A stretch of 63,289 bases of DNA, filler included, from Octopus bimaculoides (taxonomy: Eukaryota), in the NCBI RefSeq assembly GCF_001194135.2. It is 6 parts of 6 records of this genome, joined end to end, with 100 filler letters (N's around TTAATTAATTAA, not from the genome) between each part and the next. Parts side by side here need not be neighbours in the genome. Positions count along the whole stretch, not along the records: positions 48,916 to 61,925 come from NC_069009.1; 5 more parts are not named here. One strand, written 5' to 3'. This document shows positions 48,916 to 61,711 of this stretch, in pieces (position 1 is the first letter of the stretch; the number at the start of each line of letters is the position of its first letter). The position numbers and the translations under genes were made by a program. The notes under the pieces were generated by a model that saw only the letters and a program-made list of their open reading frames with translations, searched no databases and had not been told where the DNA came from.

Positions 48916-49907
48916 AATAGGAACCAAATCCATTCACAAGGCTGGGGCTAAAGAAGAAGACACTTGCCCAAGGTGCCAGGTAGTGGGACTGAACTTGAAA
49001 CCATGTGGTTGGGAAGAAAACCTCTTACCACACAGCTACACCTGCTCCTACATATTTGCTGACTTTTATGGAAACAGCTGGAGGTGGATGATGATTATAT
49101 ATTTATTCTCACAAATCCACTCAGATAGCTTTGGTCAGCCTGAATCTATAGTAGGAGACACTTGCCCAAGGTGCCGCACAGTAAGACTGAACCCAGAACC
49201 ATGTGGCTAGGAAGCAAATCTCTTACCACACAGCCATGCTTACATTTATATATTTAGCGAAAAATATAAAATACTACGCAAATTGTTTTTGATAGCTAAA
49301 CGTACGTCTGTATTTTATGAGATATAGGATAAGAAGTTTAGGAAAAAAGCATTGGAAACAATGAAATGTTATCTATATGGTCATCTTCTGGGTGTTTTAT
49401 GAAACCAAAAACTAAAATGGAGAAAAAAGATAAGGAATTCGGTCAGAATTTTCTCTGAAACATTTAGAGGATATCAAGAATCATAAATTTATTTTACTGT
49501 TTGGCAAAAAAAGTAACTAATAAATGGAGAAAAAGGAATAAAACTGAAGAAATTTAGTTGAAATTTTGTCCTTGGGAATATTAAAATGATAATGTTCATC
49601 ATCAGCACTGTAACAACAACCACCAACAACACCACAACCAATACCACTATCATCAGTACTACTACCACCATCACCATCGGCAGTAAGACTACCAATATCA
49701 CATCCACCACCATCACCAAACCATCATCATCACCAGCACAACTAACACCACCGTCACTATCACCACCACCATCATCAACCTCCCTTCTGTAATCACCATC
49801 ATCACCACCACTACAAACAAGATCACCACCACAACCACCACCACCACCACCACCTTCATGAATGTCATAATTGTTTGATTTTTATGTTTGCATGACTGAG
49901 ACACATT

Positions 49908-56197: not shown

Positions 56198-56471
56198 CAG
56201 TGGCTCAGGAACGAAATTTGCTTAGGGGGTGCAAACCCAGGTCCAAAATTTTTTACAAATTTGGTCTTGTTTTTTTTTTCTGTTATTTATTTTTGTGATT
56301 TGTTCTTTGAGAAGGAACCTAACTTCAAGGTACTTTTTACACATCACTTTTTTATTCACGGTTTTGTAAACCTGAGTAAAATAAGTAGGGCTGCAAATTT
56401 TGGTTCTGCACTCCGCAAAAATTCTAGGGGGTGCACTTGCACCACCTGCACCCCCTGTTCCCGGGCCCATG
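56198..56471. mobile_element. hAT-like MITE with 8-bp TSD
   Basis: GCGGTATC|CAGTGGCTCAGGAAC...GTTCCCGGGCCCATG|GCGGTATC; 11/15 TIR match. Confidence 0.85.
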
Positions 56472-56627
56472 GCGGTATCAAAACATTCCTGGACTTGTTA
56501 TGTAGCAGGCCAACTGATGGCGGCACACAGTTGAGTGTGCAGTGAGAGCAAGCAATGACCTTCATGAGACAGTGTGCTAAGTGATACTGCTGTGTTTACA
56601 TTATTTACATAATTCCTCATCTCTTAA

Positions 56628-56848
56628 CCCTTTAGTGTTTAAACCAGCCATATCCGCCCCAATATATTCTACATGTTTTATATTCAAACTGGCCATATCT
56701 AGCCTCTCACACCTAACCTACATTGACATTCTAAAAATAAACAATCACATCATTGAAATCTCAAAGCTATAAGATAATGCATGATTAATTCAAAACAATT
56801 TGAGTGAAAAAGTATTATATTTAACAGGGTAATCTGATCACTAAAGGG
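56628..56848. mobile_element. piggyBac-like MITE
   Basis: TTAA|CCCTTTAGTG...CACTAAAGGG|TTAA. Confidence 0.9.
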
Positions 56849-57041
56849 TTAAATATAGAACTGTATTATCTAATCGGTACGGAGCCGACATTAGACTTCA
56901 ATAGAGAAACTCCATCAAAAACTAGCTCATCTTTCAAACCATCTAACTTTAGCCCATGGGCATATGGTATAGTGGTTAAGAGCGCGAGCTACTAACCACA
57001 ACTTTCCGAGTTTGATTCCAAGAAGTAACCTGAACATTAAC

Positions 57042-57078
<37 letters not shown>

Positions 57079-57126
57079 TTGAAAAATACCTTAGAAATGA
57101 GAACCCAGGTTCGAAATTTCCCCAAG

Positions 57127-57170
57127 ACACCTGATGAAGGCTGGAAGGTATATCAGCTGAAACATTGTGT
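57127..57170 (+). ncRNA. Minimal type I hammerhead
   Basis: ACAC-CTGATGA-A-GGCTG(10 nt)CAGCT-GAAA-CAT-T-GTGT; repeated at 57409-57452 in the duplicated block. Confidence 0.75.
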
Positions 57171-57323
57171 TAACAACAAACAAGATGAGGACAAATATCC
57201 GTCAAATGTAAGTAATGTAAATAATGTACATAATTCCTCATCTCTTAAATATAGAACNNNNNNNNNNGAGCTACTAACCACAACTTTCCGAGTTTGATTC
57301 CAAGAAGTAACCTGAACATTAAC

Positions 57324-57360
<37 letters not shown>

Positions 57361-57589
57361 TTGAAAAATACCTTAGAAATGAGAACCCAGGTTCGAAATT
57401 TCCCCAAGACACCTGATGAAGGCTGGAAGGTATATCAGCTGAAACATTGTGTTAACAACAAACAAGATGAGGACAAATATCCGTCAAATGTAAGTAATGT
57501 AAATAATGTACATAATTCCTCATCTCTTAAATATAGAACTGTATTGCCATGTTTACTTTGCAAGTTTGAAATTTTGTGTTTTTGTGATC

Positions 57590-58030
57590 ACATGTATGCT
57601 GTAGTCTGCAATTTTATCATGGACAGGAACAGAGCCAATGCGAAATTTTGCTTTAAACTTGGGAAGTCTGCTACAGAGACATTGAGCATGATTTGGCAAG
57701 TTATGGCAATAAGGCAATATGTTTTGAGTGACACAGGTGCTTCAAAAGCCAAAGAATGTCCCTGGAAGACTATGTATGATCTGGAAGACCTACTATGAGT
57801 AACACCCCTGGAAATGTGGCATTTTGCATCGAGAGTTCATCCCCCAGGATCAGATCACCAATTGAGACTCCTATCATGATGATTTGAAGCATTTGAGGAA
57901 GGACATTTGGCGAAAACGACCAGATCTGTGGAGCATGAAGAATCTGATTCTTCATGATGACAAAGTCCCTGGCACCGAGTTCTCCTCACTCAAGAGTTTC
58001 TTGTGAAAAACAGCATGGTATCACTTCTAC
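57590..58030 (+). mobile_element. Internally deleted mariner relic
   Basis: RANAKFCFKLGKSATETLSM; RKRPDLWSMKNLILHDD; EFLVKNS. Confidence 0.8.
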
Positions 58031-58923
58031 TAATGGCTTCTTTCAGTTTCCGTCTACGAAATCTACTGACAAGATTGGTCCAAGGCTATAGCAGAAGCCC
58101 AAGACGTCATGCAGTGGGACTGAACCTGGAACCATGTTGCTGGGAAGCAAGCTTCTTATGACAGTCATGCTTGCACCTATTTGAAAGCGACATCATCTTT
58201 TTTATAAGTATCTGTTAAATCACATATAGAAATTTGATTGGCCACCAGCAGATATATATACACAAGCACATATATATACACACGCACATGCATATACACA
58301 AATGCACAGACACACAAACAAACACAAGTACATGCACACATAAAAACACACACATGCACGTACACTCTCACACACATACGCACACACTCATAAATACATA
58401 CAAGCATATATATACATACATACACACACACATATACACAAACATACATACACACAGACATGCACACACTCACACACATACACACAAATACACACACAAA
58501 CAGCCTGAACACTCGGCCACAAATAATTACTTTTAAAAATTTTAAATTCATAATATTCGTATTCCTTTTATTTTAAATTCTCTAAATAAAAACAAAATAC
58601 TTTAATTGCAAAAATAATTACGCACTATTTAAATTCCGTTAAGCAATTTATGTTTTAATTATTTACATGGCATCCCTGCCTCTACCAATTCCAATACAAA
58701 CGGCAATGGGAGTAAGCATATATTTAACTACAACAAGGCTACAGGCATTCCACTTATAAAGCTGCCCTTTAAAGATATTGCCAAATGGTTTCCTCTCAGA
58801 TTTAAATCTGTAATTCTTCAAGTCAAGTTACTGCGCTTTACCGAATTTCATTGCTGTCGGTCATTTTATTTTGGATTCATTATGGAGACAGACACACATA
58901 CTGACATATCACAAATTTATATA

Positions 58924-58964: not shown

Positions 58965-59330
58965 GGCATGGCTGTGTGGTAAGAAGCTTGCTTCACAACC
59001 ACGTGGTTCCTGTTTCAGTCCCACTGTGTGGCATCTTGGTTAAGTGTCTTCTATCTGTAGCCTCGGGCTGACCAAAGCCTTGTGAGTGGACTTGGTAGAT
59101 GGAAATTGAAAGAAGCCCGCGTGTGTGTGAATCGTGTGTTTGTCTCCTACCACCACTTCATAGCTGATGTTGGTGTGTTTACGCCCTTGTAACCAAGCAG
59201 TGCAGCAAAAGAGATTGATAGAATAAGTACCAGGCTTAATAAAAAAAAAGTACTTGAGTCCATTCATTTGATTAAAAATTCTTCAATGTGGTGCCCCAGC
59301 ATGACCACTGTCTAAATGACTGAAACTACG
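58965..59330 (+). mobile_element. SINE family B
   Basis: Full head, core and tail. Confidence 0.85.
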
Positions 59331-61346: not shown

Positions 61347-61550
61347 CAAGAGTTGAATATACAAACATACTTTTGTACCTATATATAGGTGTGGTATGAA
61401 GATTGCTTCCCATCCACATGAGTTTGGGTTCAGTCCCACTGTGTGGTACCTTGGGCAGGTATCTTCTACTATAACCTCACACTGACGAAAGCCTTGAGTG
61501 GATTTGGTATAGTGAAACTGAAAGAAGCCTGTTGTGTGTATATATATATA

Positions 61551-61687
61551 GATGTTTGCGATCTAGTTTGGATTTTTTGCCTTCAAATTTGAATTCTTTG
61601 CCATCAAATTTGAATTCTTTGTAATCAAATTTGGTGGCAAAAAATTCAAATTTGAAGGCAAAAAATCCAAACTAGATCGCAAACATT
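61551..61687. mobile_element. Short hairpin MITE in a TA context
   Basis: ATGTTTGCGATCTAGTTTGGATTTTTTGCCTTCAAATTTGAAT and its reverse complement. Confidence 0.85.
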
Positions 61688-61711
61688 TATATATTCCCTT
61701 CCATATCAGGT

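What the first reader, a model, noticed from the sequence alone, without database searches (positions are those of the whole stretch)
56607..57545. tRNA-headed, hammerhead-containing, terminally redundant unit (family R2)
Seen: the same 34-nt sequence opens (56607, split by a MITE) and closes (57228/57508) a ~396-nt unit. The unit contains A/B-box-like motifs, an (AAT)n tract, a degenerate HHR-like module (ATGA-GAACC ca GGTTC-GAAA, same stem II as family R1) and a well-formed HHR. Known: schistosome SM-alpha repeats combine Pol III promoters with HHRs, and retrozymes give terminal redundancy. Inference: a SINE/retrozyme hybrid that can self-transcribe, self-cleave and perhaps circularise, probably using Penelope RT.
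Basis: partly seen in the sequence, partly recalled or inferred. Interest (0 to 1): 0.85.

Follow-up and report, generated by a model that had tools for sequence, protein, structure and literature searches.

The report
Octopus SINE carrying a minimal hammerhead
This is one decayed copy of a tRNA-derived short interspersed element (SINE) of Octopus whose conserved body holds a minimal hammerhead ribozyme motif of the kind found in Penelope-like retroelements; it is a new example of a known kind of element, and nothing here shows that this locus makes RNA circles.

Summary
A 36-nt sequence (not 34) occurs at 56607-56627+56853-56867, split at TTAA by a piggyBac-type MITE, and again at 57510-57545. 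There are A and B boxes with exact tRNA spacing, an (AAT)13 tract, and a complete hammerhead core at 57126-57171.

The hammerhead is the minimal type I form without helix III, as described for Penelope-like elements (PLEs). No Rfam model matches it. A min-HHR descriptor matches it, and 0 of 300 shuffles of the piece do.

Spurious ORFs and eight fetched DNA relatives show a widespread tRNA-headed SINE family. The hammerhead core is its best-conserved part. The 36-nt "redundant" sequence is the family's own 3' end, not a target-site duplication.

Three cautions apply:
- The "double closure" at 57228/57508 rests on 272 identical bases on each side of a 10-N gap, probably one element assembled twice.
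- This copy has lost the ACGU palindrome and the G10.1-C11.1 pair through CpG decay.
- None of six relatives' loci shows the terminal redundancy.

The element is a SINE with a hammerhead, like schistosome Sm-alpha. Retrozyme behaviour at this locus is unproven.

The parts
56607..56627 (+). Upstream copy of the SINE 3' end, first 21 nt (ACATAATTCCTCATCTCTTAA). Imperfect similarity (11 of 14) extends to about 56593.
   Evidence: (D2)
56628..56848 (.). piggyBac-type MITE inserted at a TTAA inside the upstream tail copy (TTAA at 56624-27 and 56849-52). It is a later insertion and not part of the element.
   Evidence: (I6: 14-nt perfect inverted arms)
56853..56867 (+). Upstream copy of the SINE 3' end, last 15 nt (ATATAGAACTGTATT).
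   Evidence: (D5)
56868..56951 (+). Spacer of unknown origin between the upstream tail copy and the SINE head. It shows no similarity to the SINE on either strand or to the relatives.
56952..56957 (.). Candidate left target-site duplication GCCCAT(G).
   Evidence: read. It matches GCCATG directly after the SINE 3' end. Modest significance only.
56958..57033 (+). tRNA-derived head. Predicted +1 is at 56958, the A box at 56965-56975 and the B box at 57009-57019.
   Evidence: It aligns with the heads of relatives and with the abundant octopus SINE head. It is not recognised as a tRNA.
57038..57076 (+). (AAT)13 linker. Relatives have an AAT-rich or A-rich linker at the same place.
57097..57116 (+). 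It lacks C3, U4 and G5.
   Evidence: helix 1: 78% of cells paired
57126..57171 (+). Minimal type I hammerhead motif. Helix I is 57126-30 with 57167-71. CUGAUGA is at 57131-37, with an unpaired A at 57138. Helix II is 57139-44 with 57153-58. GAAA is at 57159-62, CA at 57163-64, U16.1 at 57165 and U17 at 57166. The predicted cleavage is between 57166 and 57167.
57172..57257 (+). 3' body with (AATGTAANT)x3.3 at 57205-57234 and the first 30 nt of the 36-nt tail (57228-57257), ending at the gap.
57258..57267 (.). 10-N assembly gap.
57268..57539 (+). Exact second writing of 56986-57257 (it includes a second (AAT)13 at 57320-58 and a second hammerhead at 57408-57453). Probably the same DNA assembled twice; alternatively a true second unit.
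   Evidence: (D1)
57510..57545 (+). Complete 36-nt 3' tail of the SINE. The family similarity ends at 57545.
   Evidence: L013 tail is 89% identical
57546..57551 (.). Candidate right target-site duplication GCCATG.
   Evidence: read
57572..57583 (+). First T runs downstream (TTTT, TTTTT), a possible Pol III terminator. The SINE itself has no TTTT on this strand.

Best explanation
The core of the finding is one copy (56958-57545, about 306 bp once the gap duplication is collapsed) of a tRNA-derived SINE of Octopus bimaculoides or a close relative.

The element has four parts:
- a tRNA-like head with A and B boxes;
- an AAT-rich linker;
- a conserved body that contains a minimal type I hammerhead motif;
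- a 3' tail ending ...TCATCTCTTAAATATAGAACTGTATT.

Inferred mode of action. RNA polymerase III starts near 56958 and reads through to T runs in the flank. In intact master copies the body folds into helix I and helix II around a complete CUGANGA/GAAA core. Because helix III is only the palindrome ACGU, two motifs (two RNAs, or two units of a tandem transcript) must pair to form the active dimer, which cuts after GUU. The RNA is then copied into DNA by a retroelement reverse transcriptase, most likely that of a Penelope-like element.

The copy in the window is decayed at both CpGs of the motif: C11.1 to U and G16.2 to A. It is probably a poor ribozyme or a dead one.

The 'terminal redundancy' is a second, 36-nt copy of the SINE's own 3' end, lying 84-90 nt upstream. 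It is either a Penelope-type partial-tandem 'tail' or a separate, severely 5'-truncated insertion. The apparent second unit is most likely an assembly artefact.

Shown: the anatomy, family membership, conservation of the core, and that the repeat is family sequence. Inferred: transcription, cleavage, dimer action and the Penelope partner.
For: - Motif. The descriptor matches at 57131-57166 with an extra nucleotide after A9, a 6-bp helix II and a 5-bp helix I, and 0 of 300 shuffles match. The helix I + II fold is -11.1 kcal/mol against an MFE of -12.1, and the MFE keeps both helices.
- Family size. An ORF across the body hits O. bimaculoides A0A0L8FV75 at 84% identity. A profile finds 67 clusters at 50% identity.
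- DNA relatives. Eight fetched relatives are 70-81% identical over unit positions 217-396.
- Core conservation in DNA. 9 of the 16 invariant alignment columns are core or cleavage-site positions: U4, G8, A9, the extra A, A13, A14, A15.1, U17 and 1.2.
- Core conservation in 60 translated relatives. The best-kept columns are K28 = A13-A15.1 (0.97), C30 = U17-G1.1 (0.86), G21, E20 and P18. D and E alternate exactly at the free position N7. R/H/C at 15.2-16.1 is the CpG-decay series CGU/CAU/UGU.
- Pairing. 80% of cells pair in register against 20-40% when the partners are slid.
- Consensus. With the CpGs restored it gives G10.1-C11.1 and the palindrome ACGU. These are the features listed for Penelope min-HHRs in PMC4209133.
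- Head and body. They co-occur in L004-7 and in both L011 copies. The L004 head-to-head pair places the family's 5' end at GCATATG, which corresponds to 56960.
- Tail. P0001 and L013 run from the body straight into the 36-nt sequence, and the relatives diverge right after it.
- Penelope hints. Copies lie in inverted pairs in 3 of 6 relatives' loci. A 30-40-bp tail and partial tandems are Penelope hallmarks (PMC8557442). Penelope families are recently active in O. vulgaris (PMC13282606).
Against: - No Rfam hammerhead model matches the window or any relative.
- No covariation beyond shuffles was found in nine decayed copies.
- G12 is kept in only 5 of 9 DNA copies. This is explicable by CpG decay, but it is an essential base.
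- None of the eight relatives' individual copies passes the descriptor.
- Min-HHRs cleave poorly in vitro, and relaxed descriptors give many hits genome-wide (PMC4209133).
- No Penelope gene is in the piece, and no comparison with a Penelope terminus was possible.
- The head is not recognised as a tRNA.
- The TSD GCCCAT(G)/GCCATG has an indel and only modest significance.
- If the spacer belongs to the unit, the simple 306-bp reading is wrong.
- The conservation pattern comes from hits selected by a profile, which inflates conservation near its most informative columns.
Confidence: 0.6

Rival explanations
1. This is a true tandem (retrozyme-type) array. The real locus is [36-nt partial unit][396][396], with 124 nt hidden in the gap. 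Two hammerheads lie 396 nt apart in one transcript, form the dimer, release a 396-nt RNA, and a tRNA ligase circularises it. The spacer 56868-56951 is then part of the repeat unit.
For: - TRF reports 2.0 copies, each with a complete min-HHR.
- The partial upstream unit fits Penelope-type partial tandems, which are known to break short-read assemblies.
- Relatives in other organisms appear as ~129-nt tandem arrays inside ORFs.
- An assembler would normally merge a perfect 272-nt overlap, so the failure to close hints at a repeat.
Against: - The gap is 10 N, while the other gaps in the piece are sized. 124 nt would have to be hidden.
- Identical duplications abutting both gap edges are a classic assembly artefact.
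- The spacer is absent from relatives, and the family's 5' end is at the tRNA-like head.
- A candidate TSD brackets 56958-57545.
- The fold of the 396-nt unit is not unusual (z -1.47).
- The helix III palindrome is lost in this copy.
Confidence: 0.2
2. The hammerhead likeness is coincidental or vestigial. The stretch is one of the 'highly conserved domains' of SINE superfamilies (for example the V/Vhc stem-loop), kept for a non-catalytic reason such as RNA stability, transcription or recognition by the reverse transcriptase. The element is then an ordinary LINE-mobilised SINE.
For: - SINE superfamilies with conserved central domains of unknown function are well documented, including a 39-bp Vhc block predicted to form a stem-loop in molluscs, arthropods and cnidarians (PMC4758252; PMC4824008).
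- The stem GGCUGG/YCAGCC is the main structural element.
- There is no Rfam match and no covariation.
- Helix I shrinks to about 3 bp in the most widespread subgroup, as inferred from codons.
- From memory, the zebrafish DANA V-domain has a similar GCUGGAAGG...GCUG...AAAACAU string.
Against: - The features not needed for a plain stem-loop are exactly the best conserved: CUGA-N-GA with free N7, the unpaired nucleotide, GAAA, the ACGU palindrome and U17 followed by G1.1.
- The test against a zebrafish DANA-like fragment was not significant (p 0.08 and 0.33), so membership of the V superfamily is not established.
- Inverted copy pairs and the 36-nt tail look like Penelope rather than LINE insertions.
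Confidence: 0.15
3. The 36-nt repeat is an ordinary long target-site duplication made when a 360-nt element inserted.
For: The repeat is perfect and flanks the unit.
Against: - The same sequence follows the body in an independent O. bimaculoides copy (P0001) and, at 89% identity, in another organism's copy (L013).
- Its translation (HNSSSLKYRT / HQASSQKFRQ) is conserved across the family, and similarity stops right after it.
Confidence: 0.02

Closest known systems
Minimal type I hammerheads (min-HHRs) of metazoan Penelope-like elements (Cervera & de la Pena 2014, PMC4209133)
   Same: - Complete CUGANGA/GAAA/UH core.
- No helix III hairpin.
- An unpaired nucleotide between A9 and 10.1.
- A long helix II (6 bp) and a short helix I (5 bp).
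- In the family consensus, G10.1-C11.1 and palindromic 15.2-16.2 (ACGU), implying action as a dimer.
- Widespread, mostly single, decayed copies.
   Different: - It sits in the body of a tRNA-headed SINE, not in the terminal repeat of a Penelope element. No Penelope ORF is nearby.
- The window copy has G.U at 10.1-11.1 and non-palindromic CA.
- Cleavage is untested.
Sm-alpha / Sj-alpha SINE-like elements of Schistosoma (Ferbeyre et al. 1998; recalled from memory, cited within PMC4209133)
   Same: A short non-autonomous retroelement that combines Pol III A/B boxes with a type I hammerhead.
   Different: - The schistosome hammerheads are canonical, with loop-loop contacts and a short helix III, and Rfam-type models match them. 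This one is the minimal form.
- The phylum and the sequence are different.
- This element has an AAT-rich linker giving a two-part layout.
Metazoan non-LTR retrozymes (Cervera & de la Pena 2020, PMC7229834; Li et al. 2026 preprint)
   Same: - Low-GC unit of a few hundred bp with a type I hammerhead.
- A proposed Penelope partner.
- Relatives elsewhere seem to occur as tandem arrays.
- As written, the assembly has two units with complete motifs.
   Different: - Retrozymes are defined by real tandem units and circular RNAs. Here the second unit is probably an artefact, and no expression data exist.
- Retrozymes are not described as having tRNA-derived Pol III heads.
SINE superfamilies with highly conserved central domains (V/Vhc, CORE, Deu/Nin-DC, Meta, Ceph; PMC4758252, PMC4824008)
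   Same: - A tRNA-derived head plus a body conserved far beyond one species (67 clusters at 50% identity).
- A stem-loop at the centre of the conserved block.
- Variable heads (L009 has a different head) on the same body.
   Different: - I could not assign the body to any named domain. The V-domain test was not significant.
- None of those domains has been described as a ribozyme in the papers read.
Insertion architecture of Penelope-like elements (Craig et al. 2021, PMC8557442)
   Same: - A 36-nt extra copy of the element's end upstream of the full copy (the paper describes a '30- to 40-bp tail' and partial tandems).
- Inverted copies next to each other in relatives.
- Trouble in a short-read assembly.
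   Different: - The extra copy is separated from the SINE head by 84-90 nt that are not family sequence.
- None of six relatives' loci shows it.

Membership tests
Minimal type I hammerhead of Penelope-like elements (PMC4209133) | Catalytic boxes CUGANGA and GAAA with a UH cleavage site in type I order | tested here: met
   CUGAUGA is at 57131-37, GAAA at 57159-62 and U16.1-U17 at 57165-66. The same is true of the family consensus.
Minimal type I hammerhead of Penelope-like elements (PMC4209133) | One unpaired nucleotide between A9 and 10.1 | tested here: met
   A at 57138. This column is invariant in 9 of 9 DNA copies.
Minimal type I hammerhead of Penelope-like elements (PMC4209133) | Conserved G10.1-C11.1 pair | tested here: inconclusive
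   The window has G.U. The nine copies show GU:4, GC:3 and other:2. C11.1-G12 is a CpG, and P (CCN) slightly outnumbers L (CUN) in 60 translated relatives, 26 to 25, so the ancestral state was probably G-C.
Minimal type I hammerhead of Penelope-like elements (PMC4209133) | Palindromic positions 15.2-16.2 (dimeric helix III) | tested here: not met
   The window copy has CA (ACAU), which is not palindromic. The family consensus is CG (ACGU): 6 of 9 DNA copies keep G16.2 and 7 of 9 keep C15.2, and R is the commonest residue at that codon.
Minimal type I hammerhead of Penelope-like elements (PMC4209133) | Long helix II (6-8 bp) and short helix I (4-5 bp) | tested here: met
   Helix II is 6 bp (two of them G.U) and helix I is 5 bp.
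Minimal type I hammerhead of Penelope-like elements (PMC4209133) | Families with covariation / compensatory changes | tested here: inconclusive
   80% of cells pair in register, but covariation is no higher than in shuffles. Only nine decayed copies were available.
Minimal type I hammerhead of Penelope-like elements (PMC4209133) | Location in, or homology to, the terminal repeats of a Penelope-like element | not testable with these tools
   No Penelope sequences could be compared, and there is no RT ORF in the piece.
Minimal type I hammerhead of Penelope-like elements (PMC4209133) | Self-cleavage (as a dimer) | not testable with these tools
   Needs in vitro transcription.
Canonical type I hammerhead (Rfam Hammerhead_1 and related models) | Match to a curated covariance model; helix III hairpin; loop 1-loop 2 contacts | tested here: not met
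   No hammerhead family matched at E<=1 on 13 kb, at E<=10 on 1 kb, or at E<=10 on six relatives' loci. Only 2 nt lie between A15.1 and U16.1.
tRNA-derived SINE | Internal Pol III A and B boxes with tRNA-like spacing at the 5' end | tested here: met
   The A box is at 56965-75 (11 of 11 to TRGYNNARNGG). The B box is at 57009-19 (9 of 11 to GGTTCGANNCC). They are 44 nt apart. The family's 5' end is at the head.
tRNA-derived SINE | Head recognisable as a tRNA | tested here: not met
   ARAGORN found none and there was no Rfam tRNA match. The head does align with the head of the abundant octopus SINE.
tRNA-derived SINE | Dispersed copies sharing head, body and tail, with unrelated flanks | tested here: met
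   See P0001, L002-L013 and 67 protein clusters. The flanks diverge right after the tail.
tRNA-derived SINE | Target-site duplication | tested here: inconclusive
   GCCCAT(G) at 56952-58 against GCCATG at 57546-51. There is one indel and only modest significance (read).
Metazoan non-LTR retrozyme (PMC7229834; preprint 10.64898/2026.07.22.740005) | At least two consecutive tandem units, each with a complete hammerhead | tested here: inconclusive
   Formally met in the assembly. However, the second unit is a 100% identical duplication across a 10-N gap.
Metazoan non-LTR retrozyme (PMC7229834; preprint 10.64898/2026.07.22.740005) | Low GC (<45-50%), unit of 150-450 bp | tested here: met
GC is 0.35-0.37 in the 1-kb windows that cover it.
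Metazoan non-LTR retrozyme (PMC7229834; preprint 10.64898/2026.07.22.740005) | Expression as linear and circular RNA of unit length | not testable with these tools
   No transcript data. The fold of the 396-nt unit is not unusual (z -1.47).
V-SINE / Vhc superfamily (PMC4758252) | Sequence similarity of the body to the V domain (39-bp Vhc block at least about 78% identical to the fish consensus) | tested here: inconclusive
   The only reference available was a zebrafish DANA-like 3'UTR fragment printed in PMC5147938; that it is a V-SINE is my recollection. The local alignment gave only GGCTGGAAGG, p 0.08 and 0.33.
Penelope-type insertion architecture (PMC8557442) | Partial tandem or 30-40-bp 'tail' at one end; inverted adjacent copies | tested here: inconclusive
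   The 36-nt tail copy is present but lies 84-90 nt from the head. Inverted pairs occur in L004, L011 and L013. No tail redundancy was found in six relatives' loci.

The most novel reading that the evidence does not exclude
The deeply conserved 'central domain' of a whole superfamily of tRNA-derived SINEs (67 clusters at 50% identity, with both SINE-like and ~129-nt tandem-array forms) is a minimal hammerhead ribozyme. It may be identical with one of the named conserved SINE domains whose function has been an open question since 1999-2002. These SINEs would then be Pol III-driven, Penelope-mobilised relatives of retrozymes. This octopus locus would be a real 2.09-unit array able to release a 396-nt circular RNA.
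Probability: 0.15. Interest if true: 0.7.

Novelty: new member of a known kind. Interest (0 to 1): 0.45.

Why it matters
Hammerhead-bearing SINE-like elements (schistosome Sm-alpha), Penelope min-HHRs and animal retrozymes are all known. An octopus SINE with a minimal hammerhead mainly adds a member and a phylum-level example.

Two points go a little further:
- The hammerhead core is the best-conserved part of a SINE body that is shared well beyond one species. This suggests a concrete, testable function for at least one 'highly conserved domain' of SINEs.
- The same core seems to exist both behind a Pol III head and as short tandem arrays. That would link SINEs and retrozymes as two ways of driving one Penelope-dependent RNA.

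For annotation there are two practical lessons. Rfam models miss this motif. A gap-flanking duplication can also make an automated pipeline call an 'active retrozyme'.

Tried and rejected
1. My first reading was that the CUGAUGA...GAAA pair was chance. There are seven such co-occurrences in the piece, no Rfam hit, and no helix III or cis cleavage site. I rejected this after the family data. My scan had demanded at least 2 bp in helix III. With the published min-HHR layout the motif is complete, and no shuffle matches it.

2. DNA pattern scans of metagenome, viral and GTDB contigs found nothing related. L001 is a rodent B2-like chance match.

3. A six-frame concatenated protein query found nothing.

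4. A look-up of the DNA encoding P0001 failed: it is not on record. No second O. bimaculoides copy could therefore be read as DNA.

5. Assignment to the V/Vhc domain rested on my memory of zebrafish DANA. The only printed fish fragment gave a non-significant alignment.

6. I tested whether the spacer 56868-56951 is an inverted copy of the SINE head, as in the L004 head-to-head pair. It was not significant (p 0.58).

7. I looked for further family copies in the piece and in the loci with blastn and nhmmer. There were none beyond those listed.

8. Searches of papers for the run accessions, to name the relatives' organism, and for the motif strings gave nothing useful.

9. A Pfam scan of the flanking ORF that looks mariner-like was negative.

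10. I considered an ordinary TSD and rejected it (see the rival explanations).
Full report
WHAT IS IN THE SEQUENCE. The piece is AT-rich, repeat-dense animal DNA with (TA)n/(TG)n tracts and several transposon relics. Around the finding the order is as follows:
- 56607-56627: ACATAATTCCTCATCTCTTAA.
- 56628-56848: a 221-bp MITE with perfect 10-nt terminal inverted repeats CCCTTTAGTG/CACTAAAGGG. The TTAA it inserted at (56624-56627) is duplicated at 56849-56852 (I6).
- 56853-56867: ATATAGAACTGTATT.
- 84 nt of unassigned sequence.
- A tRNA-like stretch.
- (AAT)13 at 57038-57076.
- A body with the hammerhead-like boxes.
- The same 36 nt again.

THE GAP. 56986-57257 equals 57268-57539 over all 272 nt, and the two copies touch the two edges of the 10-N gap. 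The other three gaps of the piece are sized (541, 960, 447 N) and show no flank duplication. Two readings fit. Either two contig ends overlap by 272 nt and were not merged, so there is one element. Or there is a true second 396-nt unit with 124 nt hidden. Gap-flanking perfect duplications are a common artefact, and the gap was given the minimum length, so I lean about 2:1 to the artefact. The tools cannot settle it. The 36-nt redundancy does not depend on this question: contig A alone holds the split first copy and 30 nt of the second.

THE HAMMERHEAD. Rfam gave no hammerhead and no tRNA match, at E<=1 over the piece or at E<=10 over 1 kb. ARAGORN found no tRNA. A first hand-and-script analysis found no helix III and no cleavage site with at least 2 bp in helices I and III. 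CUGANGA...GAAA pairs occur seven times in the piece. I therefore first took the motif for chance. The family data changed that.

Cervera and de la Pena (PMC4209133) describe 'min-HHRs' of Penelope-like elements. These are type I motifs without a helix III hairpin. They have a long helix II, a 4-5-bp helix I, an unpaired nucleotide between A9 and 10.1, a conserved G10.1-C11.1 pair, and palindromic 15.2-16.2, so that two motifs form helix III between them.

The window reads GACAC / CUGAUGA / A / GGCUGG-AAGGUAUA-UCAGCU / GAA-A / CA / U / U | GUGUU at 57126-57171. A descriptor written to that layout matches it, with an extra nucleotide, a 6-bp helix II and a 5-bp helix I. It matches nothing in 300 shuffles of the piece. 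The helix I + II fold costs -11.1 kcal/mol against an MFE of -12.1, and the MFE keeps both helices. The window copy departs from the published features in two places. The 10.1-11.1 pair is G.U, and 15.2-16.2 is CA, so ACAU is not a palindrome.

THE FAMILY. The reading frame across the body hits one UniRef entry, A0A0L8FV75 of Octopus bimaculoides, at 84% identity. This names the organism or a close relative and shows that a second, diverged copy exists. A profile of the two against 1.84 billion cluster representatives gave 67 hits at E<=0.001 (sequences). These are short spurious ORFs sharing ...TP[DE]EGW[RK].Y[QR][PL]K[RHC]C.NN..DED......N....SS.K[FY]R[QT], after which they diverge. Many begin with MANGIRTGDPRGFNKG, which reads as a translated tRNA T-arm/B box; this is an inference from codons. 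Several repeat the 43-residue block in tandem.

A second profile search returned nine proteins, eight of which could be traced to DNA. The unit matches these loci at 70-81% identity over positions 217-396.

The alignment shows the family layout: tRNA-like head (GGTTAAGAGCRYGGGCTACTAAC...TTCAATTCC), AAT- or A-rich linker, body, tail. Head and body co-occur in L004-7 and in both copies in L011. L009 carries a different tRNA-like head on the same body. In L004 two copies lie head to head and share GCATATGC, which puts the family's 5' end at the head. In the window this corresponds to 56958-56960, exactly where +1 is predicted from the A box.

CONSERVATION OF THE CORE. In nine DNA copies the mean column identity is 68%. 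Of the 16 invariant columns, 9 are U4, G8, A9, the extra A, A13, A14, A15.1, U17 and position 1.2. The variable core positions are the two CpGs. C11.1-G12 reads CG, TG or CA among other states, and C15.2-G16.2 reads CG, CA or TG.

In 60 translated relatives the best-kept columns are those that encode the core: K28 at 0.97, C30 at 0.86, G21, E20 and P18. D and E alternate at the codon whose third base is the free N7. R/H/C at the next codon is the CpG-decay series. The hits were chosen by a profile, which inflates conservation, so I treat this as supporting evidence and not as proof.

Helices I and II and the upstream hairpin pair in 80% of cells in register, against 20-40% when the partners are slid. 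Covariation does not exceed shuffles. None of the relatives' individual copies passes the descriptor, whereas the CpG-restored consensus does, with G-C and ACGU. No relative has an Rfam hammerhead match.

THE REDUNDANCY. The 36-nt sequence is not a TSD. P0001 runs from the body into HNSSSLKYRT. L013 has the same 36 nt at 89% identity, 11 nt after the body. The family alignment ends there. It is therefore the SINE's 3' tail, and 57545 is the SINE's 3' end.

Why a second copy of that tail lies upstream is open. It is 36 nt perfect, and 11 of the next 14 nt also match.
- Reading 1: a Penelope-type partial tandem or '30- to 40-bp tail' (PMC8557442). The 84-nt spacer would then have to be part of the unit.
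- Reading 2: an independent, severely 5'-truncated insertion.
For reading 2: GCCCAT(G) directly before the predicted +1 matches GCCATG directly after the tail; the spacer is unrelated to the SINE on either strand and is absent from relatives; and none of six relatives' loci shows a tail repeat. For reading 1: two copies of a modest family within 90 nt are unlikely by chance; three of six relatives' loci hold inverted copy pairs, a Penelope habit; and Penelope families are recently active in O. vulgaris (PMC13282606). I cannot choose between them.

THE FIRST 'DEGENERATE' MODULE. The stretch 57097-57116 (AUGA-GAACC-CA-GGUUC-GAAA) is conserved in the close relatives and pairs in 78% of cells. It has GAA or GGA where C3-U4-G5 should be. 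In the widespread subgroup the stem is not kept, as inferred from codons. I read it as a B-box-like hairpin, not as a hammerhead.

WHAT IT MOST LIKELY DOES. By analogy with tRNA-derived SINEs, Pol III starts near 56958. The element has no TTTT on this strand, and the first T runs are at 57572-57583. In intact copies the body would form the minimal hammerhead and cut after GUU when two motifs pair. The 3' tail would be recognised by the reverse transcriptase of a partner, most likely a Penelope-like element. These steps are inferred. Published min-HHRs cleave poorly in vitro, and their role is itself uncertain. This particular copy is CpG-decayed and probably inactive.

COMPARISON AND NOVELTY. 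The closest known things are Penelope min-HHRs, schistosome Sm-alpha (a SINE with a canonical hammerhead; recalled from memory), animal non-LTR retrozymes (PMC7229834; the 2026 preprint), and SINE superfamilies with conserved central domains. As written, the assembly meets the preprint's operational retrozyme rule, two consecutive units with complete HHRs, but only through the gap duplication.

I could not assign the body to a named SINE domain. A lead to the V/Vhc domain, from memory, failed a significance test.

I file the element as a new member of a known kind. The wider idea, that a conserved SINE domain is a hammerhead shared by Pol III-headed SINEs and tandem arrays, is the most novel reading not excluded.

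Noticed in passing
window 56628-56848 (TTAA at 56624-27 and 56849-52): A 221-bp piggyBac-type MITE with perfect 10-nt TIRs CCCTTTAGTG/CACTAAAGGG and a TTAA duplication, inserted into the upstream tail copy.
   Followed up: partly
window 56198-56471 (TSD 56190-97 and 56472-79): A hAT-type MITE. It has TIRs CAGTGGCTCAGGAAC / GTTCCCGGGCCCATG (11 of 15 complementary) and a perfect 8-bp duplication GCGGTATC. Read by eye.
   Followed up: no
window 58020-58180(-), 58980-59117(+), 61395-61529(+), 48966-49027(-), 49179-49244(-): Five copies of an abundant tRNA-derived SINE (...GGTAAGAAGCTTGCTTCCCAACCACATGGTTCCGGGTTCAGTCCCACTG...GGAAACTGAAAGAAGCC). Its head is distantly alignable with the head of the hammerhead SINE. 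Their (TA)n/(TG)n tails coincide with the sized assembly gaps.
   Followed up: partly
window 61547-61691: A near-perfect 145-nt hairpin scoring 101 bits on the plant MIR7533 model, far below its gathering score of 230, and on both strands of MIR7504. It looks like a palindromic MITE, not a miRNA gene.
   Followed up: no
proteins P0005, P0007, P0011, P0012, P0019, P0027, P0031, P0032: In other, unidentified organisms the same hammerhead-encoding block recurs every ~43 residues (~129 nt) within one ORF. That is, it forms tandem arrays that look like retrozyme-type repeats. No DNA could be fetched for them.
   Followed up: partly
L004 1-130; L011 136-365(-) and 690-930(+); L013 151-254(-) and 481-656(+): Three of six relatives' loci hold two family copies in inverted orientation, 0-430 nt apart. 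In L004 they lie head to head and share the palindrome GCATATGC. This is reminiscent of Penelope-type inverted insertions.
   Followed up: partly
UniProt A0A0L8FV75_OCTBM (P0001): This annotated 51-residue 'uncharacterized protein' of O. bimaculoides is a spurious ORF across a copy of the hammerhead SINE. So is the 145-aa ORF at window 57361-57798.
   Followed up: yes
window 57600-58000: This stretch reads like a decayed N-terminus of a mariner-type transposase (NAKFCFKLGKSATETLSMI), an impression from memory only. A Pfam scan of the 59-residue ORF found nothing.
   Followed up: partly
window 56595-56610 vs 57206-57221: The 16 nt just upstream of the first tail copy are 94% complementary to the (AATGTAANT) repeats near the SINE 3' end (I4). 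This could be chance in AT-rich simple sequence or a trace of an inverted fragment.
   Followed up: no
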